From the NCBI RefSeq assembly GCF_020745735.1, contig NC_083435.1, positions 37,659,090 to 37,723,089 of the forward strand: a stretch of 64,000 nt of DNA, given 5' to 3'. Positions 1-23,515 of this stretch are shown here, piece after piece. Position numbers and translations under genes: made by a program. Origin of the DNA: Hemiscyllium ocellatum (taxonomy: Eukaryota). Every line of letters starts with the position of its first letter. Position 1 is the first letter of the stretch. Below the pieces are notes generated by a model. That model ran no database searches and was not told where the DNA came from. It worked only from the letters and a program-made list of their open reading frames with translations.

Positions 1-500
1 TCACATATTAGTTGACTGTATGATAAAAGGTATTCATAATACAATGAATTCCATCTTAAGTTTGGGGAAAAAAACTCCAGTCTCAAATCGTTAAATTGTT
101 ACGAAGGGGAAATTAACTATAGTGCAATTGTAAATAAAATTACAAGGTATAATGCTTAATCAATGGAGAAAAATATTTAAAACTACATGTTCAATGAAAA
201 TACACATGATTGAGAAAAAGGACTGAGCAAGAATAATCTAATTGTGGCCTGCTAAAGAAACTAGGAAGAAAATGGGGTAAAAGATAGAACAGAAAAGTAA
301 ATCAACCAGGGATATGAAAGCAGATCTTTTACAAATAAATCAGCTAAAGTAAACATTGATCACTTAGAGGCAAAATAAATTGTAATGAGTGATAAAAGAA
401 TGAGAGACCTTGTACAAATATTTTGGCTCTATATAAAAGAGGTAACGTTACATTCCAGAAATAGGGAGTGATCAAAGAGCGAACAATAAGGCAATTCAGA
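1..500 (+). mobile_element. Old CR1-like LINE ORF2 remnant
   Basis: Degenerate similarity to the pre-RT linker seen in other CR1 copies (e.g. 37300-37520). Confidence 0.4.
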
Positions 501-1103
501 CCAGCAGAAACAGTCCAGTGCTCACTGAGTGCTTCAGTAAAATGACAGCCAAGATTTAGTGCTCAAGAACTAATTGTGTCTCAGATATGCTCACTGCTAC
601 TTGCCCATGACCAATTTCAAGTCCAAATTCCTCTCTCCTCCCCCGCCAACCACTAAGAAGGAAGCTAGGAATAAAATGGAGTAAAAGATAATGAATGACG
701 GTGAACCAATTAGAATATAAAAGCAGATCTTTTATTATATTGCCAGGCAGCAAATCCAAGACGTAGAAGTAGATTTTCAACACGTATAAAGTTTATAATA
801 AAATGAGAGTGGATGTGACAAGGACATGGCAATTTATAATATAATTTAACAATGACATCAGCTGTCATGTGCAGGAGCCTGTAAAGACAGGATAGAATGT
901 TCTGTGCTTCTGAGAGATGAACTTGCAGTGTTATATATATTGACGTAATTTCTAGGGTTTGTAAAACTCTACTAGAGTCAGTCTGAGGGCAGTCATTATA
1001 GTCCACATACAACCTGAAGGAGTTAGGATAGCTATCTCTTCAATGCGCAGAACAGAACACTCAGCCATATGTCTCATGACAACACAAACCATGGTAATAG
1101 TAA

Positions 1104-2233
1104 GTAGAACATAGAACATTACAGCGCAGTACAGGCCCTTCAGCCCTCGATGTTGCACCAACCTGTCATACCAATCTGAAACTCCTCTATTCCATGTACG
1201 TCCCTATGCTTGTCCAATGACGACTTAAATGTACTTACAGTTGGCCAATCTACTACCAGTGCAGACAAAGCATTCCATACCTTTACTACTCTCTGAGTAA
1301 AGGAACTACCTCTGACATCTGTCCTATATCTATCACCCCTCAATTTAAAGCTATGCCCCCTTGTGCTCGCCATCACTATACTTGGAAATAGGTTCTCCCT
1401 GTCCACCCTATCTAACCCTCTGATTATCTTATATGTCTCTATTAAGTCACCTCTCAATCTTCTTCACTTCAACGAAAACAGCCCCAAGTCCCTCAGCCTT
1501 TCCTCATAAGACCTTCCCTCTATACCAGGCGACATCCTAGTAAATCTCCTCTGCACCCTTTCCAAAGCTTCCACATCCTTCTTATAATGCAGTGATCAGA
1601 ACTGTATACAATACTCCAAGTGCAGCCATACCAGAGTTTTGTACAGCTGTAGCATAACCTCATGGTTCCAAAACTCGATCCCTCTATTAATAAAAGCTAA
1701 AACACTGTATGCCTTCTTAACAACCCTGTCAACCTGGGTGACAACTTTCAAGGATCTGTGTACCTGGACACCGAGATCTCTCTGCTCATCTACACTACCA
1801 AGAATCTTACCATTAGCCCAGTACTTTGCATTCCGGTTACTCCGACCAAAGTGAATCACCTCACACTTGTCCGCATTAAACTCCATTTGCCACCTCTCAG
1901 CCCAGCTCTGCAGCTTATCTATGTCTCTCTGTAACCTACTACATCCTTCATCACTATCCACAACTCCACTAACCTTAGTGTCGTCTGCAAATTTACTAAC
2001 CCAACCTTCTACGCCCTCATCCAAGTCGTTTGTAAAAATGACGAACAGCAGTGGACCCAACACTGACCCTTGTGGTACTCTGCTAGTAACTGGACTCCAG
2101 GATGAACATTTCCCAACAACCACCACCCTCTGTCTTCTTTCAACAAGCCAATTACTGATCCAAACTGTTATTATCTCCCCCAATCCCATTCCTCCACATT
2201 TTATACAATAGCCTACTGTGGGGAACCTTGTAG
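1104..2233 (-). mobile_element. CR1/HER1-like LINE, 3' part
   Basis: RT motifs [13 protein letters not shown] and SKFADDTK, C-terminal RGDLIETYKI, and an (AGAAC/ATAG)n tail. Confidence 0.9.
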
Positions 2234-2896
2234 AGATTCTGATTTAATCATGTATTGGAGCCACAGGAAAACATCAGCAGATAACTTCAAAAGAGGTAAA
2301 GAAAATATCAGAAGACTCTTACTGGGGCAAGCCAGCCATGATGTGAGCAGCAGTCTTCAAAAACTCAGAGAGCCTCCTCACAATAACGTTGAAGAAACAA
2401 TTGTACCTAGCAGCATTAAGTTGTGTGCCATTGAGCAGTGACATCAGATCTTTATGTTCCACTCGGAAGTCAGGCCTTTGAGACAGGTTGGAAGAGAGCA
2501 CTGCAGATTCAAAATCTCCCCTTAAAGGCATTCAAGGCCCATTTCATCCTAGACCAATACCTGCAATCAAGTGAATATGATTTATTCAGAGAGCCCAGAT
2601 TCCAGGGAAATCCATTGAATCATTTCTTACAGGCCTGTGAGAGTTTGTTAATTGACACGGGTGTGGAGCATTGAGAGTTGAGCTTATTCATGATCGGGTC
2701 ATCATCAGACTCTGCAGTGAAAAGCTATTCGGTTTTTTTCGGGATAAACACTGGAATTTAACACCTAAACAAACAGTTCATTACAGTATTCAAGGCAAAG
2801 GAAAAACACAGAATTGGGCAATAATGTGGGAAAATGCCGAAATTTTCGATGATTCAGTTAGTCAGGTAGATCAGAAGTGCCAGGGTTGGACAGTTT

Positions 2897-3330
2897 GAGT
2901 TATAGGGAGAGGCTGAATGGATTGGGGCTCTTTTCCCTGGAGTGTTAGAAGCTGAGGGGTGATCAGGTTTATTAAATCATGAGGGGCACGGAAAGGGTAA
3001 ATAGGCAAGGTCTTTTCCCTGGGGTGGGGGAGTCCAGAACTAGAGGGCATGGGTTTAAGGTGAGAGGGGAAAGATTTAAAAGGGACCTAAGGGGCAACAT
3101 TTTCCTGCAGAAGGTGGTACGTGTATGGAATATGTTGCCAGAGGATGTGGTGGAGGCTGGTACAATTACAGCATTTAAAAGGCATCTGGATGGGTATATG
3201 AATAAGAAGGGTTTGGTGGGATATGGGCCAAGTGCTGGCAAATGGGACTAGATTAATTTATAATATCTGGTCGGCATGGACAAGTTGGACCGAAGGGCCT
3301 GCTTCCATGCAGTGTATCTCTATGACTCAG
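2897..3330 (+). mobile_element. CR1 LINE 3' fragment
   Basis: SRTRGHGFKVRGERFKRDLRGNIF...FKRHLDGYM followed by the 3' UTR. Confidence 0.9.
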
Positions 3331-3384
3331 TGAGACAGCCCTCCTCACTCAAAAGCCTGTGGACACAGGGAAAGAGCAGGAAAG

Positions 3385-3660
3385 TAGAAGCTAGGGATAG
3401 GAATAATCTCATTTGGCCCCTCCAGCCTGCTCATTATGACTGTGGCTGACCATCCAACTCATCACCCTGTTCTTTCTGCTTTTCTCCCATTTTCTTTGCT
3501 ACCTTTAAATGCGATATCCAACTCTTTCCTGAAATCATACAATGTCTTGGTCTCAACTGCTTTCTGTTGTAGCAAATCCCACAGGGTCACCACTCTCTGG
3601 GTGAAGAAATGTCTCTTCATTTCAGTCCTAAATGCTTTAGCCAAGTGTCCTTCGGCTGTG
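3385..3660 (-). mobile_element. CR1 LINE 3' fragment
   Basis: FRTEMKRHFFTQRVVTLW...FRKELD. Confidence 0.8.
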
Positions 3661-5899
3661 GCCCCTGGTTCGGGATAGCAGTACAGCAGCTATTTAATCG
3701 TGTTCACCTAATGGAGCTGAGCAAACCATGGAGTACAAGAGCAATGGAGGAACGGCCAGGAGTTGAAGGAAGACCGGTCACTTGCAGCAATTTCTCAGAT
3801 CAAAAATTATAGCAAAAGGGAAAAGAAATGACACCTCGAAAAACCAGATGCTTCAAGAAATTGGAAGTTAAAAAAACATATCTCTTATGGATAGTTACGG
3901 AGGAAAACCAGAGATTATGTTCAGTCACCCTAGAAACAAAAGGCTTCGCAAAAGAATTTAAGATAAGCACTGATGTTGGTATGACAATCTTGGCAAGCCT
4001 TTTGCAATGGCTCCAAGAAGCAGTTGTAACAGGCAACGCTCAGATTGCAGTTGACATATTGTCTCAAGATACAATGGATTCCAAGTTAGATTTAGACTTT
4101 GTTGTCACGTGTACAAAAGTACAGGAGTGCAGTGCAAAGTTTTCAATGTTGTCCCACACAGTGCCATCTCAGGTACAAGTACTTAGGTACAAAAGCTTAA
4201 GAACGAATAGAAAGAACAAAGTTAAAAGCTAAACATTGCAGTTGCTCTTAGCATAGCTGGAAAAATTAAAGAATAAAATGAAACGACACAGTCCTTCTTC
4301 ACATTATGTCAAGAAAAAGAAATTAAAGCTAAATGTTCAGCCATTGCTGAGCTGTTCTGGAACTGCACTTCCTAAAAGAGCTCATCCTCCTACATTTTCT
4401 ACACACTCGCTCGATGTTTCGTCATCACTGCAAATGTCAGGGGATCCTCCATGGCTGTGTTGGATCTCAGGGAGGAGAAAATTAGAACTGCAGATGCTGA
4501 AACTCAGAGTCAAGAGTGTGGCGCTGGAAAAGCACAGCCAGTCAGGCAGCATCTGAGGAGCAGGAGAATTGACATTTTGGGCATAAGCGCTTTGGGCTGT
4601 AAGCACCACACTCTCGATGCGTAGAATCTCAGACTGACCAACCTCTGATCAAGGTGCCACCCAAGCAGATCCTCTGTCTCACCTTTGGTCCATGCACAGG
4701 CATCTGGAATTCACTGAGAGTCCCGGGTCAGGCCCCAGATGCTGCCTAACATTAGACATCTAGCTAACCGCCAAATTCACCGAGCCCGATACTGCTGCTG
4801 CCACTGCCTTGCCCCAGAAGGTAAGTTTGTAGACAAAAAAAACTTTAAAAAAAATTAAAACTGAAAGAAAGAAAACAATTAAAGAGAAGGAGGAAGAAGA
4901 GCAGGCCAAATGGCCAAGACTACTCAGCCACCATCTTGTAGAGGTGGGGACTGCCATAAGTCTGCACAGGGCTGTCACCACAATCGAGCTCTTCAACAGA
5001 GTTAAAATAATATGAGAAAGAAAAAAAGGATGAGGAAAGAGAGGGAAGGAGAAAAAAAGAAAAGAAAATTGGGCAGAGTGAGCGATACCCAAGATCAGAA
5101 GCCCTACTCTGCTGCCGTTGAATAAAAAGATTTGGTCTTTGTTATGGGCAACAACAAAATGCTTCTACTTCTGAAACAAATTGTTTGCCGGCTTCTAAGA
5201 AGAAATTTCAAAAAACCAGGGACAGCTCAAGGTTGGTGCAGAATAGCCCACATCAGAAAATTCTGTCAAGAGGGTTGGGCAAGTGATCAGCTGTGATGGA
5301 AGCATCATGACCTTCGCAGACCATATTGTATGACAGTGGTCCACAATTTGTGAATTGGTACTTTGTGATGGATGAGTTTTCAATCTTTAATCACAGCCTG
5401 CCAACACCAAAGGCAATGCCCAAAGAAATTCTTCAGAGAGTCTATGGAGATCACTTGAGGAAAAACAAGTTTAGAGTTTGCATGTAATGAATGACGGTCA
5501 GGAACTATTTTTAAAAAATGGTGGATTTACTCTGCCACACATGTATAATCCAGAAACGGCCAGGCACCAGCAGAACTATGATTTTTTTTCTTGTAATCTC
5601 TTAGACAGGCCCTGGAAATTTGGAAATGGACCTCTTCCACTTTCAAGGGAACCAGCATTTTTTATCAAAGTAGATATTTCTCTATGTGACTAAACATTAC
5701 CAGACTTCACACTATAACTGAGGCAGTGATCAAGTCACTGTGGAACATCTTTTCACAAAGGGCTTTCCAGACAAGTTTGTTTTAATGAGTGGTCCACAAT
5801 TTGTGAATTAATCCTTTCAGAGATTCACACCATCCAAAAATGCAAATAAGGAGCTGAACTGGCAGCTGAGGCGACTCTGCAATTCATTGATGATCTCGA

Positions 5900-7050
5900 A
5901 ATGTCTTAAACTCTACATTCCCATCTACCCCGAAGACCTTTGAAAATTAAAGTATACTGCATGCATCAACTCTTCTTTATCAATTCTCTTAGGAACTCCA
6001 ATAAGCTCATCAAACATGGTTTTCCATTCACAAACCCATGCTAACATTGCTCAATCAGATCATTATTAGTCAAATGTCTATTTATCCCTTTCTCTATAGA
6101 ATTTTCCTTGCTACTTCTGTAAAGCTATAGACAGTTGTAAAAAATGAGGTCTGCAGATGCTGGAGATCACAGCTGCAAATGTGTTGCTGGTCAAAGCACA
6201 GCAGGTTAGGCAGCATCTCAGGAATAGAGAATTCGACGTTTCGAGCATAAGCCCTTCATCAGGAATAAGAGAGAGAGTAGCCAAGCAGGCTAAGATAAAA
6301 GGTAGGGAGGAGGGACTTGGGGGAGGGGCGATGGAGGTGGGATAGGTGGAAGGAGGTCAAGGTGAGGGTGATAGGCCGGAGTGGGGTGGGGGCGTAGACA
6401 GTTGTCCCCAGTTCTCTCTCTCACTTCATTCTTAAATAGTTGGGTGTCATTTGCTATTGTTCAACCTGCAGGAATCATTCAGAATTATAAAGGATGTTTG
6501 AAGGTAATCACCAATACCTAACCCAAAGCTTATCTTTTATAGTCACCCCCTTCAACACTTAAGGATGTAAAACATCAGATTCAAGTGATTCGTCTACTTT
6601 CAACCCCTTTAATTGCTCCAATACAATCTTCTTTACTCATACTAATATCCTTCAACTCCTCATTCTCCCTAATCACTTGGATCTCTAGTTCTGGGAGACT
6701 TATGCCTTTTCCTCCTGCAAAATAGATGCAAAGTAATCACTTTGCGTCTCTGCCAATTCTATATTCCACATTTTAACTTGTCCTAACTCTGCCTTTAATG
6801 GACTCATTCATTTTAGCCAACTGTTTCCATTTTAAGTATCTTTTGAAACTTTTCCAGTTTATATTTATATTTCTGCAAGATTAAATTTATAATTTATTCT
6901 TGCTTTCCTCAAAATGTTCTTGGTCCTCAGAATTGCTGCTGTTTCAGGCAATATTATAGGCTTTAATTATAACCAAATCTACTCCTGAACTTCTTTTGTT
7001 TGTCATGATGTCTAGCTTTTTTGAGTTTGGAGGAATGGATAGTTGCTGAG
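5900..7050 (-). mobile_element. Old CR1 ORF2 remnant, interrupted by a Penelope fragment at about 6140-6400
   Basis: Degenerate antisense RT N-terminal sequence; the insert matches the Penelope termini found elsewhere in the window. Confidence 0.55.
6231..6265 (-). ncRNA. Minimal type I hammerhead ribozyme motif (Penelope-associated)
   Basis: Sense sequence TTC CTGATGA A GGGC TTAT GCTC GAAA C GTC GAA T: catalytic core, stem II, GUC site and stem I TTC/GAA. Confidence 0.7.
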
Positions 7051-7055
7051 GTCAT

Positions 7056-7367
7056 TAGAGTAGATTAGATTCCCTTCAGTGTGGAAACAGGCCCTTCGGC
7101 CCAACCGACCCTCCGAAGTGTAACCCACCCAGACCCATTTCCCTCTGACTAATGCTCCTAACACAGTATGTGCAATTTAGCATGGCCAATTCACCTGACC
7201 TGCACATCTTTGAACTGTTGGAGAAAACTGGAGCACCCAGAGGAAACCCACATAGACATGGGGAGAATGTGCAAACTCCACACGGACAGTTACCCGAGGC
7301 TGGAATTGAACCTGAGACCCTGGTGCTGTGAGGCAGCAGTGCTAACCACTGAGTCACCGTCCCACCC
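7056..7367 (-). mobile_element. HE1-type tRNA-derived SINE
   Basis: A/B-box-like head (GTGGTTAGCACTGCTGCCTCACAGC...GGTTCAATTCC), V-SINE-like core and (AATCT)n tail. Confidence 0.9.
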
Positions 7368-7530
7368 ATGTAATAGTTATTTAGAAGACATGCCTGTACA
7401 AAGGAAACGGGTAGTTTTTAAAAAATATTTGCTCAATTCCCCTCAATCAATTTGTGCCTCATGCCTTCAGCATTTCTCTAGATGGAAGTGGTCATGGGTT
7501 TGGAAGGTGCTGTCTAAGGATCTTTGGTGA

Positions 7531-7714
7531 AGATGAGATCCCTGATTTGGGCTGTTAATCTGGTCAAATCAGGGAGCCCTAGCTGACAGATAAAAGCAGA
7601 GGTGACAGATAAAAGCACTCTGATCTGGTTCTGAGGGAGCTGGAGTAATGTCTTTCCACATGTAAGTAAAGGGTGACTTGGTGATAGGATACCAGCCTCT
7701 GTGGAATTATTTCA
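7531..7714 (+). mobile_element. LTR-like 3' fragment
   Basis: TATA-like GATAAAAG and an end of ...CCAGCCTCTGTGGAATTATTTCA. Confidence 0.35.
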
Positions 7715-8461
7715 GTAACTTTAGGTCATCCACCTTGTTGTGAATGCTGTGTGCAGTTACTTGACAGTGCAACTTAATATGGCCCAGAGTTGGGAAGTTA
7801 GAAGAAACAGTCCTCAGATAGGCAGAGCAACCGCATTCTCATAGTGACCAAACCAGATTGGAATGTTCAGTAGGACCCAAAACGTATCAATACTACTCAG
7901 AGCAAAAAAACTGAATGAGTGTAATGACCATAAACTGTGAGATACTGAGAAAGAATGCATCGACTATTATACAGAATTACAATTACATCACGGCAATGGT
8001 TGAAGACTCTTGCCCTTGGATCAGTGGTGATGAGAGTAAGACCAGAATAAACTATAAGATGCTACAAAGACACAACCTGTGAAGTTCAGGTATTACTGTT
8101 GGTTGGGGGGTGTTAATGGTGGAAGAAATGGTTAAAAAGCGTCCAAGTTAAAGTTGAGAGAAACTTGGGGGCACTGTAGTATTATAATCATGCATATGAT
8201 GATGATGATATAGAACATAATATCGTGTTTGATTTAATCAGATATATGTACAAGATGGTGAAAAAATGATGGAATAGTTTTTACTTGTAAGAGACATTTG
8301 TACAATTACTCTTTTTTTCCACAACAGTGTAAATAAAAGACTTTGCAAAAACCTATTAGAGACAGACAGCAGTCATTATTAAGTAAATAGGGAACCATTA
8401 CCACCCATAGATTTCAAAGAAGAGACTGGGGCAGTTATCCTCCCATGTCCTGAATAGATTG

Positions 8462-8678
8462 TTTTTTGTTGTTGTATCAGACCACAGGGGCTGCTCTCTC
8501 ATTAGAAAGGAGTGGCTGGTGGTGATTTAGCCTGAGGGCCACCTGACCTCAGGCAAGGGAAGAGGTTGAGAAGGAGAGTCCTTCATCATAACCTCATACC
8601 ATGATGGGAATTGAACCCTTGTTACTGGTGTCATACTGCTCTGTAAGCCAACAAGCCAGCCAACTGAGCTCAACCAAT
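8462..8678 (-). mobile_element. tRNA-derived SINE (second family)
   Basis: Antisense GAGCTCAGTTGG...GGGTTCAATTCCC head; a partial sister copy lies at 9370-9550 (+). Confidence 0.7.
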
Positions 8679-8880
8679 TCCCCTTGAATAGAGCAATGAG
8701 CCAGAAGCCTTTAACAATACAGCCAAAGCTGGCCTTTATTTCAGTGGAAATTAGGTGTTTGTCTGCCACCTCTTGGTAATGTAATCCTGGGAGCAATGAC
8801 AACATACAAACAGGCTAATTCAGAACTGAATGGGTTCAGGGACAGAGGAATAATCATGATCTTATTCAAATGTGTTTCAG

Positions 8881-8997
8881 AAGTCCCAGGAAACAGCGCT
8901 GGACACTCACATCTTGAAATGTTAGGATTCATGATCACTCCACTGGCTATTATAGTTGGAATAATCGGATTAGTAATGTGGAAAAGGACGCAGAGAG
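8881..8997 (+). pseudogene. Transmembrane exon of a second (relic) MHC class I-like gene
   Basis: tgtgtttcag|AAGTC...AGAGAG|gtgagt, 117 nt, phase 1/1. Encodes EVPGNSAGHSHLEMLGFMITPLAIIVGIIGLVMWKRTQR and shares E(V/I)P, SHL and W(K/R)R..R|G with the minus-strand TM exon. No intact alpha exons were found upstream. Confidence 0.75.
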
Positions 8998-9254
8998 GTG
9001 AGTATCAGAGGAAGTAGAATATCAAACCAGGCAGTCTCAACCATCACTAATTGTTTTCCCTAATGAGACAGCATCCTTACTGTGCTCTGGGACTCTGGTG
9101 GCTTGACCTATTTATCTGGGTAGTCTAGTTCAGTTTCTGTTCTGTTGTAACCTCTAGGATGCCACAGAGATTTAGAAGGTGAGTCCATCATGGTAACCTA
9201 AGCTGGAAGGTGATTGAACCTCTGTTGTTGGCATCACTCTGCATTGCACTGTAT

Positions 9255-9475
9255 TCTGGATGTGGTCTCACCAAATCCTTGTATAAATAAAGCACAATCT
9301 CTTTACTTTTGTATTCAATTCCCTTTGCAATGAGCAATAATATTCTGCTGGCTTTCCGACATTCCCACATTGGCTGAGATTACCATGAAGTACACTCATT
9401 CTCGACCTCTCCAGTTGCCTAAGGTATGGTGACCCTCAAGTTAAATCACGACTTGCTGTCGCTTTTTCTCTCTCT

Positions 9476-9527
<52 letters not shown>

Positions 9528-10010
9528 TGAGAAAGCAATCCTATGGTCCAGTCAGTACAACTAACCTCTTGTAATTTGTGCACAAGGATGCTCAGATCCC
9601 TCTGCATGTCAGAGTTCTGTAATCTCTCACCATTTAGATAATATGCTACATTTATGCTCTTTACCACAAAATGGACAATATTTTAATTATACACTATTAT
9701 CCACATCTTTGCCCAATCACCCAACCTATCAATATCCTTTTGTCACCTCCTTGCAGCTCCTTCACGATCTTCTTTCCCATCTGTCTTTGTGTCATCAGCA
9801 AATTTAGTAACCATACCTTCCGTCCCTTCATCGAAATAACTGTTACAGATTACAAAATGTTGAAGTCCCAAAACTGAACTTTGTGGTGCATCACCTGTTA
9901 CTTCTTGCCAGCCAGAGGATGACCCAAGTTATGCCTACTCTCTATTTCCTGCTTGCTTGCTCATCTTCTCTCCATGACAACATGCTCCCTCCAACAATGT
10001 GAGTGTAGGA
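9255..10010 (-). mobile_element. Old CR1 RT remnant with a nested SINE
   Basis: GIEYKSKEIVLYLYKDLVRPH and YYLNGERLQ...RDL fragments. Confidence 0.7.
9467..9524 (+). repeat. (CT)n microsatellite
   Basis: Directly visible. Confidence 0.97.
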
Positions 10011-10252
10011 ATGAGTAGGAAAACAAAGCTGAGGCAGAAGATCAGACATGGTTGTATTGAAGAGTACAACAGGCTATATCAGCCACTGAGCTCAAGTTGC
10101 TCTAATTTCTATCTCTCTTAACCTGAGCATTTCCAGCAGTTTCGGTTTGAGTTTATTTATTTAGGTTTACTGTTTCCCATTGTAGTCTCTCTCACTTTTG
10201 TACACACCCCAGCATATATTAAAAGCGGGGTGAAAAAAATAGTAGTGCAAGA

Positions 10253-10712
10253 CACATGAGAGCCATACTAATGTACAACGTGAAAACAGACCATTTGGTC
10301 CAACTCGTCCATACCAACCAAATATCCCAACCTAGTCTAGTCCCATTTGCCAGCACTTGGCCCATATCCCTTCCTATTCATATACCCATCCAGATGCCTT
10401 TTAGATGTTGTAATTATACCAGCCTCCACCACTTCCTCTGGCAGCTCATTCCATACATACACCACCCTCTGTGTGAAAAAGTTGCCCCTTCGATCCCTTT
10501 TATATCTTTCCCCTCTCACCCTGAACCTATGCCCTCTAGTTCTGGTCTCCCCCACCCCAGGGAAAAGACTTTGTCTATTTCCCCTATCCATGCCCCTCAT
10601 GATTTTATAAGACTCTATAAGGTCACCCCTCAGCCTCCAATGCTCCAGGGAAAACAGTCCCAGCCTACTCAACTTCTCCCTGTAGCTCAAATCCTCCAAC
10701 CCTGGCAACATC
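10253..10712 (-). mobile_element. CR1 LINE 3' fragment in the TM-cytoplasmic intron
   Basis: RMLPGLEDLSYREKLSRLGLFSLE...RGDLIESYKI. Confidence 0.9.
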
Positions 10713-10765
10713 CTTGTATCTACGTGCATACATTGACAGTTAAAACTCCTAATTCTTGCCCACAG

Positions 10766-10825
10766 GTAAACCTGGAAACCTACAACAACAATGCCATGGG
10801 AAGTCTGGAGAAGAACATCAAACAG
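10766..10825 (+). pseudogene. First cytoplasmic exon of the plus-strand class I relic
   Basis: cttgcccacag|60 nt|gtgaga. Open in phase 1 (GKPGNLQQQCHGKSGEEHQT). Confidence 0.7.
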
Positions 10826-10937
10826 GTGAGATTCCAAATTTTTCCAAACACTGATTAAATCACTATAATGTATTTCTATCCACATTTACACTTTTCCCAA
10901 ATGTTGCACAGTTGACGGTGTTTAATGTTTTTATTAG

Positions 10938-11080
10938 TTTCTACGCAACCATTTCTGGAAACGGGACCCACTCTCCACCAACAGGAAGCCACGGATAATA
11001 AAGTGGAACTGGAGCTAATTGAATCCCACACGTTACTCAAGTCAGAGCCTGTTCAGAGAGACTCAGAACCTGAAACCTGA
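10938..11080 (+). pseudogene. Terminal cytoplasmic exon of the plus-strand class I relic
   Basis: ttttattag| phase 1. Encodes VSTQPFLETGPTLHQQEATDNKVELELIESHTLLKSEPVQRDSEPET* (TGA at 11078-11080). Paralogous to 47331-47623. Confidence 0.72.
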
Positions 11081-11259
11081 CCCAGTGGGAGAAACCAAAC
11101 TCCTAGCGAACAAGAATTGAGTCTGGTTCTGACAGATGATGTAAATAAAGTGTAAAGTAATCCAGGTAATGACATTCTCCTAATCAAGTACAAAGAACAG
11201 GAATAATGTGGGTTTTACTGAGTCCACATCCTGGAACTAAATCATCACCTGAAGAATAA

Positions 11260-12216
11260 TCAGACCCCAAGAATTTGGAGGAGCTGAGCGGATGAGAATG
11301 ATGACTGAGAAGAACAAGCTTGTTCACAAAGGGAGGGAAAAGCTGAAAACAGTTTCAATGGTATTAAAATAGAAGTAACTTCCAAAAATGTGTTTTTCAA
11401 TGTTTCAAACAGTGGTGAAAAATTATTAACAACAAGCATATTAAAGGTAGGACATTGAGTGTGCTGCATTTGAAGGAGAGAGACAGTTTTGAAGAATATA
11501 ACCAATAGAAACAACACACCGTGTCATTCGAGAAAGATTGGCTGAAAGAACAAGTTATCCAACACTGTGCAGCCGCAAATGATGAACAAGTTCCTCTGTT
11601 GCGCTCTCTCGCTTTGGAAGTTCTACACAGGATTATCACCCGGGTGAGGGATACTGTGAAAGACAGAACACCTTCAAATAGTGAGCAGTCAGTTACTGGG
11701 ATCATTCAGACATTCAGAGCAAATCTGGGGGATGAGATACAGATTTCACAAGAGACAGTGGGACCTGTTACTATTCAGTCTGAAAAGGTTAACACTCAGA
11801 ACTTCAAACAAGAAATTGAATGTTTTATCAGAACAAATGATCTGACTGAAAGGGTTAAAAACTGGGAGCAGGACATTGCTGGGAAAATCACTGTTTCCCC
11901 ATCCAGTGAATTGTCCACAATGTTATGTGGCTGTGGGGAGCAGTGTCCCTTCTGTGGAGGCCTGTGTGATTGTATGAACAGGGAGCACACACAGCACAGC
12001 GCTGAATATCACCGGAGCCAAGAGCTGAATGAATACAGAAACAACATGAATGTGAAGTTAAGATCAGAGAATTAGACAACAGCTGTTGCCAGTTTCACAA
12101 ATAAGGACATGAAATGGAATCCACATTGTGAGAAGGCCTTCAGAGATCGCAATGACCAGTGTAGACACTGGAATGTGCCTTCTGATAGCAGCATCAAAAC
12201 ATTAGACCTTTGGAAG
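11260..12216 (+). pseudogene. Very large inducible GTPase (GVIN1/URGCP family) C-terminal region, disrupted; no GTPase domain
   Basis: One frame with several stops: LHLKERDSFEEYNQ*...SFEKDWLKEQVIQHC, then LCGCGEQCPFCGGLCDCMNREHTQHSAEYHRSQ, then TTAVAS...WNPH...HWNVPSDSSIKTLDLWK. These match, in order, motifs I recall from VLIG/URGCP C-termini. Confidence 0.8.
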
Positions 12217-12439
12217 AAAGACAAAACATTCAGCAGATCTGACAACATCTGCGGGGCGACAAACAGTGTTAATGTTTCAGGCGATTATCTTTCATCTGAA
12301 CTGGGACAAGTTTGACATGTGATATGTTTTATGCAGATGAAATGAGAACGTTTGGAATATGGTGTAAGGTGGGAGACACTATGCACCAGAAATTCTTTTG
12401 TCACTTAGAGTAACAGGATCGTACTGAGGCAGATAAGAA

Positions 12440-12483: not shown

Positions 12484-12919
12484 AGGTCATGGTGTCAGTA
12501 TTTTAAAAGACATTGCGGTTTCATAGCTTGTGACTTGAGGGTATGAAGATCTCATACTCCATCTTACCTCAGCTCACTTGAAGCATGACACCGACTGGCA
12601 GCATGTTCCTCTGCGGTCATCTAAGCATTTACTGTTAGCCCAGACACCTATGTGCCTCAGGAATATAATGTTTGTACATAATAGTCAACTGTAATCAGTA
12701 TGTGCTGTATTCGTCAATATCACAATTGAAAAAAAATGTTTTAAAATTGAGGACTGTGGAAGGCTGTGTATTTGAAAACACGTTTGCTGGAGCTCATTGT
12801 GAGTTGTGTTTACAGTGCTGCTTTGTAGGCAGTGAGGACAAATATCATGCCACTGGGGCGTGTTCATGCAGAGTGAGATTTGGCCAGCAACAGATTGCTG
12901 TTTGGTTTATGCAGTTATA

Positions 12920-13515: not shown

Positions 13516-13959
13516 CTCCAGGTCAGAGGAACACTTGGATATTTACAATAAAAGGAGGGAAACGTCTGGCCTGCTAAAGTTGATTCTGTGTCTTTGTCAT
13601 TGTGCTATAAAAGTAACTAAAGCCTGTTGAAAACCAATTATCTTCTCTCATCATTTATTGTGGGTTATTGACAAGTAACTTTAAGATTTTACATTGAGTA
13701 TATCAATTGCCATGTGCCTCCTGTGAAAAAAAATGAAAGAATTCAGAGAGGATATGTCTTTAACAGTCTCAACTTCAACACCACCACATCATTTCTTCAT
13801 CAATTCCTGTCCCGCCCTATTCCACTTCTACCCTTCCACTTCCTACTCCAGTTCCCCAACTTCCTTAACCCCCATTCAATTTCCCATCTCCACTTCCCCA
13901 ATTTCTATTCCCGCAATTCCACTTCTCCCCCTTTCATTTTGTCTTTCTATTCCAGCTCC

Positions 13960-15680
13960 ACTTGTCCCCCCACTGCCCATTGTCATACCTACACCAACAC
14001 TCACCCCTCCACTCCCCCCACTACCCATCAATATGTCCCCTCCTACACTCCCACCCCCCAACCACCCCAACTGCCCATCCCCATGTCCCCACCTACACTC
14101 CCCCCTCCACCCCCATGCTCACCATGTCCATGTCCCCTCCTACACTCCCCCCTCCACCCCCAACACTCACCAGCACCATGTCCCCACCTACACTCCCCCC
14201 TCCACCCCCAACACTCACCAGCACCATGTCCCCACCTACACTCCCCCCTCCACCCCCAACACTCACCAGCACCATGTCCCCACCTACACTCCCCCCTCCA
14301 CCCCCAACACTCACCAGCACCATGTCCCCACTTACACTCCCCCCTCCCACCCCCCCACTACCCATCACCATGTCCCCTCCTACACTCTCCCCTCCACGCC
14401 TTCAATGCCCATCACCATGTCCACTTCTACTCCCCCCTCCACTCCCCCCACAAACCATCCCCATGTGCCTGCCTTCGCTACCACCTCCAACCCCACTGCC
14501 CATCACCATGTCCCCTGCTACACTCCCCCCTCCAACCACCCCCCCCACTGCCCATCACCATGTCCTCTCCTACACACCTCATCCACCCACCCCACTGACG
14601 CTCGACTTGTCTCCTTCTATACTTCCCCTCCACCCCCCTACTACTCATCCCCATGTCTTGTCCTTCACTACACCCTCCAACTCCCCCAATGCCCATCACC
14701 AAGTCCCCTCCTGCACTCTCCCCCCCCCCCCCCACTGCCCATCGCCATGTCTCCTCCTCCACTTCCCCCCTCCACACCCCCATCCCCATGCCCCCTCCTA
14801 CATTCCCCACTCCATCCCCGGCTGCTCAACCCCATGTCCGCTCCTACGCTCCACCATCCACCCCCCACTGCCCATCGCCATGACCCCTCCTCCACTCCCC
14901 CTTCCAACCCCACTGCCACTCTCCATGTCCCCTACTACAGTCCCCCCTCCACCCCCCCACTGCCCATCACCATAACCCCTCCTATACTTCCACCCCACCC
15001 CCCAACAGCCCATCCCCATGTTCCCTCATACGCTCCTCCCTCCGCCCCTCACTGCCGACCCCATGTCCCCTCCTACACTCCCCCCACTCCACCCACTGCC
15101 CATCACCATATTCCCTCCTACTCCCCCCTCTCCACCCCCCACTGCCCATCACTATGTCCCCTTCCACACGCCACCCTCCACCCTACACTGCCCTTCACCT
15201 TGTCCCCTCCTCCACTCCCGCCCTCCACCCCCCACTGCCTTCCCCATGTCCCCTCCTACACTCCCCGCCCTCCACCCCCCACTGCCCTTCCCCATGTCCC
15301 CTCCTACACTCCACTCTCCACCCCCCACTGCCCTTCCCCATGTCCCCTCCTATGCTCCCCCCTCCACCCACCAATGCCCATCACCATGTCCCCTCCTGCG
15401 CTCCCCCCTCCAACCTCCCACTGCCCATCACCATGTCCCCATCTACACCCCCCTCCACTGCCACCACTGCCTTCCCCATGTCCCCTCCTTCACTCCCCCC
15501 TCAACCCCCCACTGCCCTTCACCATGTCCCCTCCTATACTCTCCCTTCTACCCCCCACACTCACCATCACCATGTCCCCTCCTACACACCTCCTCCACCC
15601 CCCCACTGCCCATCGATGTATCCCCTCTTGCACTCACCCCTCCACCCCCGCACTGCTCATCACCATGTCCCCTCCTGCAC

Positions 15681-15714
<34 letters not shown>

Positions 15715-15725
15715 ACTGCCCACTG
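13960..15725 (+). repeat. C-rich minisatellite (about 42-48 bp unit)
   Basis: Repeats of CCACTGCCCATCACCATGTCCCCTCCTACACTCCCCC. About four near-perfect 48-bp units lie at 14150-14345; poly-C at 15682-15714. Confidence 0.95.
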
Positions 15726-15974
15726 CCATGTCCCCATGTGTGACTGTGCAGATCCCATGCTTTGTGTGCATTTCATTATGGGCTGGAGTCAGGTAGCCTT
15801 TGTAACCTCGAAGCCAGTGTGGGTTGCTGCGGTGGATCAGAGATAAGTGACATAGTGAACTCCAACAAAATTATAGAAATTATGACTGTTGCATGAACAG
15901 CCGTGGGATCACTGCAGTACTGAAAGAGGCCATTTGGCCAATCGAGTATGCACTGACCCTCTGAAGAGCGTCCC

Positions 15975-18346: not shown

Positions 18347-19457
18347 GAACATAGAACATAGAAAAATACAGCGCAGTACAGGCCCTCCGGCCCTCGATGT
18401 TGCGCTGACCGAAGCCTATCTAACCTACACTAGCCCAATAACCTCCATATGCTTATCCAATGCCCGCTTAAATGACCATAAAGAGGGAGAGTCCACCACT
18501 GCTACTGGCAGGGCATTCCATGAACTCACAACCCGCTGAGTAAAGAATCTACCCCTAACATCTGTCCTATACCTACCACCCCTTAATTTAAAGCTGTGTC
18601 CCCTAGTAACAGCTGACTCCATTAGCGGAAAAAGGTTCTCACTGTCAACCCTATCTAAACCCCTAATCATCTTGTACACCTCTATCAAATCTCCCCTAAA
18701 CCTTCTTTTCTCCAATGAGAACAGCCCCAAGTGCCTCAGCCTTTCCTCATACGATCTTCCTACCATGCCAGGCAACATCCTGGTAAACCTCCTCTGCACC
18801 CGTTCCAGTGCCTCCACATCCTTCCTACAGTATGGCGACCAAAACTGCACACAATACTTCAGATGAGGCCGCACCAGAGTCTTATACAACTGCAACATGA
18901 CCTCAGGACTCTGGAACTCAATTCCTCTACCAATAAAAGCCCAGTACACCATATGCCTTCTTCACAGCACTATTTACCTGGATGGCAACTTTCAGAGATC
19001 TGTGTACATGGGCACCAAGATCCCTCTGCTCATCCACACTACCAAGTAGCCTACCATTAGCCCAGTAATCCATCTTCTTGTTACTCCTACCAAAGTGAAT
19101 GACTTCACACTTAGCTACACTGAACTCCATTTGCCACCTTTCTGCCCAGCTCTGCAACTTATCAATATCCCGCTGTAACCTGCCACATCCTTCTTCGCTG
19201 TCCACAACTCCACCGACTTTCGTATCATCCGCAAACTTGCTCACCCAGCCTTCAAGCCCCTCCTCCTGGTCATTTATAAAAATGACAAACAGCAATGGTC
19301 CCAAAACAGATCCTTGTGGAACACCGCTAGTAACTGCACTCCAAGATGAACCTTTACCATCAACTACTACCCTCTGTCTCCTTCCAGCCAGCCAATTCCT
19401 AATCCAAACCTCTAATGCACCCTCAATGCCATACCTCCATAATTTTTGCAGTAGCCT
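18347..19457 (-). mobile_element. CR1 LINE 3' part (RT)
   Basis: GPLLFVIFIND...SKFADDTK and LYKTLVRPHLKYCVQFWSP. Confidence 0.92.
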
Positions 19458-20138
19458 AGTAGAGAGAAGATCCCCATTTCATTCTAACTCAGAAGCAAAT
19501 TATTCAGGATTTTGGAATAGAAACTGAAAATTTGGCAAACACGCAGCAGGTCTGACAGCGTCTGTGGGCAGAAAGCAGAGTTAATGTTTAGGTTCCAGTG
19601 ACCCTTCCTCAGAACTGATTGTGGATGGGTGAAGGTGGGAGAGATGCTGAAGAGGAGGGATTGGGAGCAGCTGGAAAGGAGTAAGTGGATAGGTGGACAA
19701 AGAGCCAGAGGGAGAGAAAGACAGTTAGGAAGACAAAGGAATGAATGATTTCCTGCATCAATGTTTCCTGTTGCTGACCTCTCTCTGCTCAGTTTAAGCT
19801 GAAGTGCTGGGCCCCTAATTCTGTGTCTCAATTTATCCTTTTGCTGACTCCCTTCTCACTGCTCTATGTGCTGTTAACTCACTCATTTTATTTTGAATGC
19901 TATGTTTCTGACAAGAATTCTGCGTCTTTGAATGCGTCTTCAGTCATTATTTCCACATTGACATAAAGCCTTTTGCACAAGTTACCAAATATTGATGTGA
20001 AGTTCTTTCTGTACTTTGTGTTCCAACCACCTTTCCAATTATTTTTTCAATTATCCCTGCTCTTCCCTCATTCCCTAGCATTTCTGCTTCAATGGAACTG
20101 ATGTCAGCATTTTTTAATTCTTCTAAACTCAAGCTAGG

Positions 20139-20997: not shown

Positions 20998-23515
20998 GTT
21001 AGAATATAGAACACAGAACATAGAACAGCACAGCACAGAACAGGCCCTTCAGCCCATGATGTTGTGCCGACCACTGATCCCCATATATGCACCCTCAAAT
21101 TTCTGTGACTATATACATGTCCAGGATTCTCTTAAATGTCCCCAATGACCTCGCTTTCACAACTGCTGCTGGCAACACATTCCATGCTCTCACAACTCTC
21201 TGTGTAAAGAACCTGCCTCTGACATCCCCTCTACACTTTCCTCCAACCAGCTTAAAACTGTGGCCCCTCGTGTTAGTCATTTCTGCCCTGGGAAATAGTC
21301 TCTGGCTATTTACTGTATCTATGCCTCTCATTATCTTGTATACCTCAATTAGGTCCCCTCTCCTCCTCCTTTTCTCCAAGGAAAAAGTCCGAGCTCAGTC
21401 AACCTCTCTTCATAAGTTAAACCCTCCATTCCAAGCAGCATCCTGGTAAACCTCCTCTGAACCCTCTCCAAAGCATCCACATCTTTCCTATAATAGGGCA
21501 ACCAGAACTGGACGCAGTATTCCAAGTGCAGTCTAACCAAAGTTTTATAGAGCTGCAACAAGATCTCACGGCTGTTAAACTCAATCCCCCTGTTAATGAA
21601 AGCCAAAACACCATATGCTTTCTTAACAACCCTGTCCACTTGGGTGGCCATTTTAAGGGATCTATGTACCTGCACACCAAGATCCCTCTGTTCCTCCACA
21701 CTGCCAAGAATCCTATCCTTAATCCTGTACTCAGATTCCAAATTCGACCTTCCAAAATGCATCACCTCGCATTTATCCAGGTTGAACTCCATCTGCCACC
21801 TCTCAGCCCATCTCTGCATCCTGTCAATGTCCCGCTGCAGCCTACAACAGCCCTCTATATTGTCAACGACACCTCCAACCTTTGTGTTGTCTGCAAACTT
21901 GCTGACCCATCCTTCAATCTCCTCATCCAAATCATTAACAAACATTACAAACAGTAGAGGCCCAAGGACAGAGCCCTGTGCAACACCACTCACCACAGAC
22001 TCCAGGCAGAATATTTTCCTTCTACTACCACTCGCTGTCTTCTGTTGGCCAGCCAATTCTGTAGCCAGACAGCTAAGTTCCCCTGTATCCCATTCCTCCT
22101 GACCTTCTGAATGAGCCTATCATGGGGAACCTTATCAAATGCCTTGCTAAAGTCCATATACACCACATCCACAGCTCGATCCTCATCAACCTTTCTAGTC
22201 ACATCCTCAAAGAACTCAATAAGGTTTGTGAGACATGACCTGCCCCTCCCAAAGTCGTGTTGACTGCATTTAATCAAGCCATGCTCTTCCAGATGGTCAT
22301 AATTCCTATTCCTCAGAATCCTGTCTAACACCTTGCAGATGACAGACGTGAGACTGATTGGTCTGTAATTGCTGGGAATTTCCCTATTTCCTTTCTTGAA
22401 GAGAGGAATTACATTTGCCTCTCTCCAGTCCTCAGGTATGACTCCAGTGGAGAGCGAGGATGCAAAGATCTTCGCAAGTGGTGAAGCAATTGTATTTCTC
22501 GTTTCCCAAAGCAGCCGAGGACAAATCTGGTCCGGGCCTGGCGACTTGTCAATCTTAATATTTGACAAAATTTACAGGACCTCAGCTTCCTCTATCTTTA
22601 TCCATTCCAGTATGTACACCTGCTCTTCAAAAATTTCATTCACTACAAAGTTTATTTCTTTCGTAAAGACAGAAGCAAAAAACTCATTTAGGGCTTCCCC
22701 TACCTCCTCAGATTCCACACACAAATTCCCTATGCTATCCCTGATCGGCCCTACTCTTTCTTTGACCATTCTCTTATTCCTCACATAAGTGTAAAATGCC
22801 TTTGTGTTCTCCCTAATCCGTTCTGTAAAGCCTTTCTCGTGCCCCTTCCTGGCTCTCCTCAGACCATTTTTGAGCTCCTTCCTTGCCTGCGTGAAATCCT
22901 CTAGAGCTGAGCTTGACCCTAGCTTCCTCCACCTTATGTAAGCTACCTTCTTCCTTTTGACGAGAAGCTCCACCGCTCTCGTCATCCAAGGTTCCTTTAT
23001 CTTACCACTTCTTGCCTGTCTCAGAGGGACATATTTATTCATCACTTGCAACAACTGTTCCTTAAACAATCTCCACATGTCTATAATGCCTTTACCATGG
23101 AACAATTGTTCCCAGTCCATGTTTCCTAACTCATGTCTAATCGCATCATAGTTTCCTCTTCCCCAATTAAATATCCTCCCATTTTGCCCTAATCCTCTCC
23201 TTTTCCATAGCTATGTAGAATGTGAGGCAGTTGTGGTCACTATCACCAAAATGCTCTCCCACCACAAGATCTGATACCTGCCCTGACTTGTTTCCAAGCA
23301 CCAAGTCTAGAATGGCCTCTCCTCTCGTCGGCTGTCAACGTACTGAGTTAGGAAACCCTCCTGAACACACCTTACAAAAACAGCTCCATTCAAATCTTCT
23401 GCTCGAAGGAGGTTCCAATCAATATTGGGAAAGTTAAAGTCACCCATTACAACAACCCTACTACGTCCACACTTTTCCAAAATCTGCCGACCTATGTGTT
23501 CTTCCATCTCCCTGC
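20998..23515 (-). mobile_element. CR1 LINE ORF2 (endonuclease end plus RT), frameshifted
   Basis: VVVMGDFNFPNIDW; DKSPGPDQICPRLL...DFSKAFDKVPH; [10 protein letters not shown]...FADNTK. Confidence 0.93.

What the first reader, a model, noticed from the sequence alone, without database searches (positions are those of the whole stretch)
8881..12216. MHC class I-like receptor whose cytoplasmic exon runs into a VLIG (GVIN1/URGCP) C-terminal module: a candidate MHC-VLIG fusion gene
Seen: TM exon, 60-nt exon and terminal exon splice together in matching phase 1. The terminal exon continues, with no recognisable intron, through several stops and one frameshift (near 11200) into about 320 codons of VLIG-like sequence. 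That sequence includes GCGEQCPFCGGLC...H...H...HR, SFEKDWLKEQVIQHC and WNVPSDSSIKTLDLWK. Established: GVIN1/URGCP are interferon-associated very large GTPases with this Cys/His motif near the C-terminus, and class I tails are normally short. Inference: the ancestral gene was a membrane class I molecule with a long tail ending in the VLIG C-terminal module but without the GTPase domain, a possible signalling receptor architecture. I know of no description of it.
Basis: partly seen in the sequence, partly recalled or inferred. Interest (0 to 1): 0.92.

Follow-up and report, generated by a model that had tools for sequence, protein, structure and literature searches.

The report
Decayed shark MHC-I–giant GTPase fusion
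This is a broken copy of a shark gene in which an MHC class I-like surface molecule is spliced onto an interferon-type giant GTPase (VLIG/GVIN1). An intact fusion of this kind is predicted elsewhere in the epaulette shark but, as far as I could find, has not been described in the literature.

Summary
The piece 11461-12315 is a true VLIG/GVIN1 C-terminal module (E 1.5e-37 against 1.8 billion proteins; 65% identical to a bamboo-shark VLIG).

The "class I terminal exon" is itself VLIG. From its acceptor (AG 10936-37) it is the 5' end of the single giant VLIG coding exon. Three collinear VLIG pieces remain (N-terminus, residues ~423-479, C-terminus). The URGCP and GTPase domains are deleted.

The minus-strand paralogue (47623-46813) has the same three-piece layout, so the deletions predate an old duplication (dS ~1.2).

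The 15 codons between the acceptor and the VLIG start codon differ between the copies almost only at third positions (1/1/8, p 0.003). This stretch is therefore translated in the frame set by the class I transmembrane exon.

RefSeq model XP_060706692.1 (Hemiscyllium ocellatum) joins MHC_I + C1-set + TM to a full-length VLIG at the same junction.

The fusion idea is thus supported, but the original partner was most likely a whole VLIG. This copy now stops at 11078-80. A functional GTPase-less fusion remains unproven.

The scan noted a possible intact class I-GVIN fusion before, on other DNA of this genome (s1-203487). I found no paper describing the architecture.

The parts
8881..8997 (+). Transmembrane exon of the plus-strand class I-like gene (117 nt, phase 1/1)
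   Evidence: Splice sites read. It is 33-39% identical to the TM exon of the minus paralogue and of XP_060706692.1. Hydrophobic stretch confirmed.
10766..10825 (+). Putative 60-nt cytoplasmic exon (phase 1/1); doubtful
   Evidence: Canonical cag|..|gtgaga sites. No counterpart in the minus copy. Absent from the XP_060706692.1 junction WKRPWR|VSAQPE.
10938..11080 (+). Present cytoplasmic-tail ORF: 5' end of the VLIG exon, 47 codons, ending at TGA 11078-80. The VLIG start codon position reads ACG at 10991-93.
   Evidence: tblastn of P0122 residues 56-145, E 9e-7 / 2.7e-12. dN/dS 0.22 against the minus copy. Third-position bias 2/2/12.
10938..11269 (+). VLIG N-terminal segment (up to about residue 106 of P0123), 4 in-frame stops
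   Evidence: P0123 residues 2-106 and P0122 residues 56-145 align here.
11269..11419 (+). VLIG middle segment (profile positions ~423-479, end of URGCP domain), with frame changes and stops
   Evidence: hmmsearch with a profile of 8 shark VLIGs matched 441-479. 0 of 300 dinucleotide shuffles reach the score. tblastn of P0124 residues 385-419 and P0126 residues 482-549.
11461..12315 (+). VLIG C-terminal module (GVIN1_C type, Cys/His motif at 11926-12020). Stops at 11506-08 and 12073-75. Natural end near TGA 12313-15.
   Evidence: HMM 1351-1609, E 3e-111. 11 of 12 conserved Cys/His/Pro/Gly/Phe positions kept; the twelfth is the 12073 stop.
11144..11149 (+). AATAAA 64 nt after the tail stop codon; possible poly(A) signal of the class I transcript
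   Evidence: Pattern scan. The homologous AATAAA lies inside the open tail ORF of the minus copy, so its use is uncertain.
59118..59222 (-). TM exon of the minus-strand class I paralogue (105 nt, phase 1/1)
   Evidence: Read. Homology shown.
59342..60012 (-). Alpha2 (MHC_I) and alpha3 (C1-set) exons of the minus paralogue
   Evidence: Pfam PF00129 E 5e-14 and PF07654 E 4e-17. About 62% (alpha2) and 93% (alpha3) identical to XP_060706692.1, counted by eye from the alignment.
47331..47623 (-). Minus paralogue tail exon: VLIG N-terminus, open for 97 codons, VLIG Met retained
   Evidence: Acceptor AG 47625-24 read.
46813..47190 (-). Minus paralogue relic: VLIG middle segment (47190-46993) and the first ~45 codons of the C-terminal segment (46944-46813), then lost
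   Evidence: 1 of 300 shuffles reach the score, and 0 of 300 give overlapping profile coordinates in both copies.

Best explanation
The locus is a decayed paralogue of a shark class I-VLIG fusion gene.

Shown:
- From the acceptor at 10936-37 onward, the DNA is the single giant coding exon of a VLIG/GVIN1-type GTPase gene.
- Three collinear pieces of that exon remain: the N-terminus (10938-11269), residues ~423-479 (11269-11419) and the C-terminal ~285 codons (11461-12315).
- The URGCP and GTPase domains are missing.
- There are about 10 stops and at least 3 frame changes.
- The class I TM exon (phase 1) joins this exon in frame.

Inferred:
- The founding gene encoded a class I-like ectodomain, one TM helix and a complete cytoplasmic VLIG, as in RefSeq model XP_060706692.1.
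- Two internal deletions removed the enzymatic core before the plus and minus copies duplicated.
- Since then, only the first 47 (plus) or 97 (minus) VLIG-derived codons have been kept under selection, as an acidic cytoplasmic tail of the class I-like molecule.
- Today the plus gene, if expressed, ends at TGA 11078-80. The Cys/His module lies untranslated in its 3' UTR or flank.
- The module's unusually good preservation most likely reflects a later gene-conversion tract from an intact VLIG paralogue. This last step is the weakest.
For: VLIG identity:
- Best hit of 115 at 1.5e-37. Hits carry URGCP and URGCP_GTPase domains and are named very large GTPase.
- Closer shark VLIGs are 59-65% identical over 258 residues.

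The tail exon is the VLIG N-terminus:
- P0122 residues 56-148 match both 10937-11179 and 47609-47352.
- P0123 starts MNTEVEQ at the position of DNKVELE / MDKNVELK.
- The P0123 CDS is a single 4971-nt exon.

The three-piece layout is shared by both copies:
- Profile positions 441-479 (plus) and 423-470 (minus).
- Shuffles reach the score 0/300 (plus) and 1/300 (minus). None give coincident coordinates in both copies.
- Both copies share a ~10-residue gap before MLHLKE.

No GTPase or URGCP piece occurs anywhere in the window.

The junction is translated:
- 25 ungapped codons differ at positions 2/2/12 (p 0.0008).
- The 15 codons upstream of the VLIG start differ 1/1/8 (p 0.003).
- NG86 pS 0.60 against pN 0.225, Fisher p 2e-4.
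- The 18-25 nt before the acceptor are also conserved.
- TM and tail exons have the same dS (1.34 and 1.22), so they duplicated together.

Intact counterpart, XP_060706692.1 (1932 aa):
- MHC_I residues 7-126 (E 1.5e-22), C1-set 137-216, a TM helix, then WKRPWR|VSAQPEPDHALHHQEAMDTEVEQ and a full VLIG.
- Its alpha3 is ~93% identical to the window's minus gene (counted by eye).

Decay of the module:
- 31% of columns invariant in 8 intact VLIGs are changed. Both stops sit on invariant columns.
- Terminal branch 0.47 against a median of 0.14.
Against: - No transcript data. XP_060706692.1 is a computed model. It starts inside alpha1 without a leader, and its ~90%-identical Chiloscyllium counterparts are annotated as stand-alone VLIGs starting at the Met.
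- Two database searches for further class I-VLIG proteins found none, though cluster members are hidden behind their representatives.
- The plus gene's ectodomain exons lie outside the window, and I did not see them.
- The C-terminal module shows no frame change in 284 codons and only ~0.16 subs/site of apparent neutral decay, against ~0.6 expected since the duplication. Gene conversion explains this only if assumed. Prolonged translation of the module would explain it as well.
Confidence: 0.6

Rival explanations
1. After the GTPase core was deleted, the gene worked as a class I-like receptor whose long tail ended in the VLIG Cys/His C-terminal module. The plus copy kept that reading frame until recently.
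For: - The deletions are shared by both copies, so they predate a duplication with dS ~1.2.
- Even so, the plus module has only 2 stops, no frame change and 3-4 in-frame gaps in 284 codons.
- It keeps 11 of 12 conserved Cys/His positions and 69% of invariant columns.
- That is much less decay than full neutrality since the duplication would give.
- The module occurs with other N-terminal domains (fn3, PYRIN) in database proteins.
Against: - The 128 codons between the tail and the module (11078-11460) hold at least 8 stops and at least 3 frame changes. I found no plausible donor/acceptor pair that would remove them (inspection).
- The N-to-middle junction is out of frame in the plus copy.
- The minus copy lost the module altogether.
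- 31% of otherwise invariant residues are replaced.
- No database protein with class I + module but without the GTPase was found. None of 131 checked proteins other than P0122, the frog models and XP_060706692.1 has a TM segment in front of the module.
Confidence: 0.2
2. Neighbours only. A class I gene merely lies upstream of a dead VLIG gene. The in-frame splice is a coincidence, and XP_060706692.1 is a read-through annotation chimera.
For: - Gene models of shark VLIG N-termini are inconsistent. P0125 carries an extra GTPase, P0126 a low-complexity repeat and P0140 an RT-like stretch.
- Chiloscyllium counterparts start at the Met.
- VLIG genes normally have 5' non-coding exons that use this acceptor (my own knowledge, not tested here).
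Against: - Third-position bias and dN/dS of 0.22 in the 15-25 codons around and upstream of the VLIG start, measured between two relics whose VLIG function is long gone.
- The acceptor region is conserved at dS > 1.
- The same TM-to-VLIG junction is in frame in three genes.
- No other class I cytoplasmic exon with a stop codon was seen between the TM exon and 10938.
Confidence: 0.12
3. The VLIG piece is a retrocopy or transposed fragment that landed in the 3' UTR of a class I gene.
For: The VLIG CDS is intronless, so a retrocopy would look like genomic DNA.
Against: - No poly(A) run after the VLIG end; the nearest A8 is at 12729.
- The relic starts with the VLIG exon's own splice acceptor and upstream codons, not with a transcript 5' end.
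- The same arrangement is present in the old minus paralogue and in an intact gene model.
Confidence: 0.03

Closest known systems
RefSeq model XP_060706692.1, 'interferon-induced very large GTPase 1-like', Hemiscyllium ocellatum (P0133)
   Same: - Class I alpha2/alpha3 are about 62% and 93% identical to the window's minus gene.
- The TM exon is spliced in phase 1 to the VLIG exon at the same acceptor (R|VS(A/T)QP).
- The VLIG clade is the same: 63% identity to 11461-12216.
   Different: - It has an uninterrupted full-length VLIG with URGCP, GTPase and GVIN1_C domains.
- The window copies have lost residues ~107-422 and ~480-1340 and carry stops.
- It is a computed model, it lacks a leader, and it is named only as a GTPase.
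VLIG / GVIN1 / URGCP family of giant interferon-inducible GTPases
   Same: - The C-terminal module with GCGxxCPFCxxxC...H..H....H matches at E 1e-37 to 1e-106.
- The N-terminal acidic region and a piece of the URGCP domain are also recognisable.
- Human GVIN1 is reported to coat cytosolic bacteria (bioRxiv 10.1101/2025.03.24.645074; title and abstract only).
   Different: - No GTPase domain and no intact ORF.
- It is preceded in frame by a class I TM exon.
- Described family members are cytosolic, as far as I know.
Elasmobranch non-classical MHC-Ib lineages (UBA, UDA, UEA, UFA; PMC10751288)
   Same: - Multicopy class I-like genes with altered grooves on the MHC chromosome.
- The minus gene has MHC_I and C1-set domains.
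   Different: - That paper does not mention GTPase, VLIG or cytoplasmic regions.
- The tail here is VLIG-derived.
- I did not assign the genes to a lineage.
Membrane-anchored VLIG models of frogs (e.g. XP_077303238.1, XP_069840766.1, XP_068100083.1) and horn shark XP_067865890.1
   Same: A signal peptide or TM helix, followed by an acidic region and a full VLIG. The horn shark model uses the same acceptor (VSARLSQETDLTLHHPETMDNEVELE).
   Different: - They have no class I ectodomain.
- All are computed models.
- No sequence similarity of the horn shark model's (P0122's) TM part to the window.

Membership tests
VLIG/GVIN1 giant GTPase | URGCP-like GTPase domain (PF25683) with P-loop | tested here: not met
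   tblastn of 20 full-length VLIGs and a profile of 8 shark VLIGs find no GTPase-domain match anywhere in the 64 kb.
VLIG/GVIN1 giant GTPase | URGCP domain (PF25496) N-terminal to the GTPase | tested here: not met
   Only its last ~55 positions (profile 423-479) survive, in both copies.
VLIG/GVIN1 giant GTPase | C-terminal module with conserved Cys/His cluster (PF26772 GVIN1_C in newer Pfam) | tested here: met
   phmmer 1.5e-37 and profile 3e-111. 11 of 12 conserved positions are present. The local Pfam copy lacks this model.
VLIG/GVIN1 giant GTPase | Uninterrupted single-exon ORF of about 1600-2400 codons | tested here: not met
   About 10 stops, at least 3 frame changes and two internal deletions.
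MHC class I-like gene | Alpha1/alpha2 MHC_I fold and C1-set alpha3 | tested here: inconclusive
   Met for the minus paralogue (PF00129 5e-14, PF07654 4e-17). For the plus gene these exons lie before the window start (none found in 1-8880).
MHC class I-like gene | Phase-1 connecting-peptide/TM exon after alpha3 | tested here: met
   8881-8997, homologous to the minus TM exon that directly follows alpha3.
Class I-VLIG fusion (as in XP_060706692.1) | TM-exon donor and VLIG-exon acceptor in the same phase, with an open frame across the junction | tested here: met
   Both are phase 1. G|TT gives V-STQPF (plus) and G|CT gives A-QPF (minus). The model reads R|VSAQPE.
Class I-VLIG fusion (as in XP_060706692.1) | Junction codons upstream of the VLIG Met evolve as coding sequence | tested here: met
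   Differences by codon position 1/1/8 in 15 codons (p 0.003). dN/dS 0.22 over 44 codons.
Class I-VLIG fusion (as in XP_060706692.1) | A single mRNA containing class I and VLIG exons | not testable with these tools
   No transcript data were available. The DNA of the RefSeq locus could not be fetched.

The most novel reading that the evidence does not exclude
Sharks have a working family of receptors in which a class I-like ectodomain and one TM helix are covalently joined to a complete interferon-type giant GTPase. This would tether a cell-autonomous defence machine to membranes through an MHC-like sensor. The window holds two ancient derivatives that kept the VLIG-derived tail. In the plus lineage, the zinc-finger-like C-terminal module may also have stayed translated as a GTPase-less signalling tail for a long time.
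Probability: 0.4. Interest if true: 0.85.

Novelty: new variant of a known kind. Interest (0 to 1): 0.68.

Why it matters
MHC class I-like molecules and interferon-inducible giant GTPases are both central to vertebrate immunity. As far as I know, and in the papers searched here, they have never been reported in one polypeptide.

If the fusion is real, it would give a concrete handle on two things:
- what non-classical shark class I molecules do;
- how VLIG proteins, whose function is only starting to be understood, are brought to membranes.

The window adds something the RefSeq model cannot. Two old paralogues show protein-level constraint across the class I-VLIG junction. That argues the splice is real and old, not an annotation accident.

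The locus itself is a relic, so its own present function is at most a class I-like protein with a short borrowed tail.

Tried and rejected
- Pfam on the ORF pieces gave only noise, because the local library lacks GVIN1_C.
- A profile of the 240 residues upstream of the module found no contiguous VLIG homology in 11081-11460. That was right: the middle piece comes from residues 423-479, not from the flank of the module.
- My by-eye match of PQEFGGAERMRMM to SPQDIPGYFLRNLMM was rejected. It lies out of frame over the better-supported middle segment.
- DNA-level search for the plus exons in the minus copy found only the tail exon, 70% identical over 148 nt.
- No alpha3 or alpha1 exon was found for the plus gene in 1-8880, and no alpha1 for the minus gene above 60040.
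- Database searches with P0122 residues 1-160 and P0133 residues 1-300 returned nothing new.
- The N-terminal signal/TM part of horn shark P0122 shows no similarity to the window.
- No TM segment was found in any short database protein that carries the module.
- I looked for a donor in 10938-11080 and an acceptor near 11410-11460 that would splice out the decayed stretch. Only cag at 11410-12 looks like an acceptor, and it is followed at once by TGG TGA.
- Partial Chiloscyllium plagiosum entries P0137 and P0138 do not cover the module, so no nucleotide-level dN/dS of the module was possible.
- Literature searches for a class I-VLIG fusion found nothing.
Full report
**1. What is there**

The window is TE-rich shark DNA. 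Notes from other agents of this scan call the genome the epaulette shark. My data fit that but do not prove it.

I read three plus-strand exons, all with canonical splice sites and all in phase 1:
- a TM exon at 8881-8997;
- a 60-nt exon at 10766-10825;
- an exon starting at 10938.

The spliced frame reads ...WKRTQR-(G KPGNLQQQCHGKSGEEHQT)-VSTQPFLETGPTLHQQEATDNKVELELIES... and stops at TGA 11078-80. A splice from the TM exon straight to 10938 is equally in frame.

**2. The VLIG module is real**

- ORF 11521-12072 found 115 proteins among 1.84 billion, best E 1.5e-37, always matching near the C-terminus of proteins 1,500-3,700 residues long.
- These proteins carry URGCP and URGCP_GTPase domains and are named interferon-induced very large GTPase 1-like.
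- A second search recovered closer shark relatives. They align to 11461-12216 in one frame at 59-65% identity, E down to 5e-94. Weaker alignments reach 12303.
- The segment has two in-frame stops (11506-08, 12073-75) and no frame change.
- It keeps 11 of the 12 positions that are invariant or nearly so in 57 family members. The twelfth, a Cys, is the 12073 stop.

**3. The 'class I terminal exon' is VLIG too**

- Horn shark VLIG P0122 residues 56-148 match both 10937-11179 and the minus-strand stretch 47609-47352.
- Bamboo shark VLIG P0123 has a CDS that is one 4,971-nt exon. It begins MNTEVEQMITES, exactly where the plus copy reads TDNKVELELIES and the minus copy MDKNVELKLMS.
- So 10938 is the acceptor of the giant VLIG exon. 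The VLIG start codon sits 17 full codons downstream of it, after the split V (ACG in plus, ATG in minus).

**4. A three-piece relic shared by both paralogues**

Sensitive tblastn and a profile of eight shark VLIGs show the following pieces:
- Plus copy: N-terminus up to about residue 106 (10938-11269), profile positions 441-479 (11303-11419, preceded by KNLEEL at 11269-86), then positions 1351 to the end (11461-12315).
- Minus copy: N-terminus (47623-47331, open for 97 codons), positions 423-470 (47123-46993), then positions ~1320-1375 (46944-46813), after which homology is lost.

The middle-piece scores were reached by 0 of 300 (plus) and 1 of 300 (minus) dinucleotide shuffles. No shuffle pair gave overlapping profile coordinates in both copies.

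Both copies also lack about 10 residues just before MLHLKE.

No URGCP-core or GTPase sequence exists anywhere in the window.

The two deletions therefore predate the plus/minus duplication. Between 11078 and 11460 the plus copy has at least 8 stops and at least 3 frame changes.

**5. The class I context**

- The minus gene has an MHC_I alpha2 exon (E 5e-14) and a C1-set alpha3 exon (E 4e-17) directly upstream of its TM exon 59222-59118.
- The plus TM exon is homologous to the minus TM exon.
I found none in 1-8880.

**6. Is the junction used?**

- Plus and minus tail exons align over 44 codons with pS 0.60 and pN 0.225 (dN/dS 0.22, Fisher p 2e-4).
- In the 25 ungapped codons, differences fall 2/2/12 by codon position (p 0.0008).
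- In the 15 codons upstream of the VLIG start codon they fall 1/1/8 (p 0.003).
- A 5' UTR would not behave like this, and the VLIG function of both relics is long gone. The simplest reading is that these codons are translated as the cytoplasmic tail of the class I-like protein.
- TM and tail exons have the same dS (1.34 and 1.22), as expected if they duplicated as one unit.
- About 20 nt upstream of the acceptor are also conserved.

**7. An intact counterpart exists**

While listing the 90% cluster of P0123, I found XP_060706692.1 of Hemiscyllium ocellatum (P0133, 1,932 aa).

Its layout is as follows:
- MHC_I at residues 7-126 and C1-set at residues 137-216;
- a TM helix;
- then WKRPWR|VSAQPEPDHALHHQEAMDTEVEQ..., running into a complete VLIG with all its domains.

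Its alpha3 is about 93% identical to the window's minus gene, counted by eye from the alignment. A 349-residue class I gene lies 8.8 kb upstream of it.

Caveats:
- It is a computed model that starts inside alpha1.
- Its Chiloscyllium counterparts are annotated as stand-alone VLIGs.
- Searches for further examples found none.

Other computed models show that membrane-anchored VLIGs recur:
- Horn shark XP_067865890.1 puts a signal-like and a TM-like segment on the same acceptor.
- Frog RefSeq models place a signal peptide, a TM helix and acidic repeats before a full VLIG.

An earlier first-reader note (s1-203487) flags a possible intact class I-GVIN fusion 1.88 Mb upstream in this genome. It may be the same locus as P0133.

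**8. What remains unexplained**

The plus C-terminal module is clearly unconstrained today:
- only 68 of 99 columns invariant in eight intact VLIGs still match, against 87-99% for intact members;
- both stops hit invariant columns;
- its terminal branch is 0.47 against a median of 0.14.

That corresponds to only about 0.16 neutral substitutions per site. The duplication implies about 0.6 per lineage, and there is no frame change in 284 codons.

The switch in preservation is abrupt at 11461.

The heavily broken 11078-11460 stretch, the lack of a splice route around it, and the loss of the module in the minus copy make me favour conversion. I could not test it without the paralogues' nucleotide sequences.

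**9. Verdict**

- The fusion idea is supported in a stronger form than proposed: the partner was a whole VLIG.
- The specific GTPase-less receptor remains a minority possibility.
- I found no description of a class I-VLIG fusion in the searchable literature.
- The locus itself is a relic. Its value is as evolutionary evidence that the class I-VLIG splice is old and was under selection.

Noticed in passing
database proteins P0031, P0044, P0070 (frogs) and P0122 (horn shark): RefSeq VLIG models with a signal peptide and/or one TM helix and long acidic repeats in front of a complete VLIG. Membrane-anchored VLIGs may be a recurrent, undescribed architecture.
   Followed up: partly
alignment A1 (57 short proteins carrying the VLIG C-terminal module): Four members combine the module with fn3 domains and one with a PYRIN domain, so the module may occur outside giant GTPases. 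I did not check which proteins these are or whether the models are sound.
   Followed up: no
window 48413-49060 (-): ORF with a GIY-YIG-like motif (GLLYTGETGRLLAERFREHL), probably a Penelope-like element, inside the 11.5-kb intron between the minus TM exon and its VLIG exon. Identified by eye only.
   Followed up: no
window 13727-15793 (+) and 49002-49940 (-): Long proline/histidine/threonine-rich low-complexity open frames (689 and 313 codons) on both sides of the convergent gene pair. Nature unknown.
   Followed up: no
window ~58360-58980 (-): Tandem repeats of about 88 nt (peptide REGGMGNEGTGVWGNLLYWEYRALRGESE in one frame) starting right after the donor of the minus TM exon.
   Followed up: no
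window 10254-10718 and at least 8 other places (e.g. 2878-3307, 35526-35991, 41210-41667, 60515-60924): A ~460-nt interspersed repeat at 82-86% identity. One copy ends 48 nt before the putative 60-nt exon. RT-like fragments lie at 1599-2243, 18930-19478 and 21352-22116 (-).
   Followed up: no
window 11142-11151 (+) and 47461-47452 (-): GTAAATAAAG is conserved in both tail exons. It lies after the stop codon in the plus copy but inside the open frame (VNK) in the minus copy, so it could be a poly(A) signal gained by exaptation in one copy only.
   Followed up: partly
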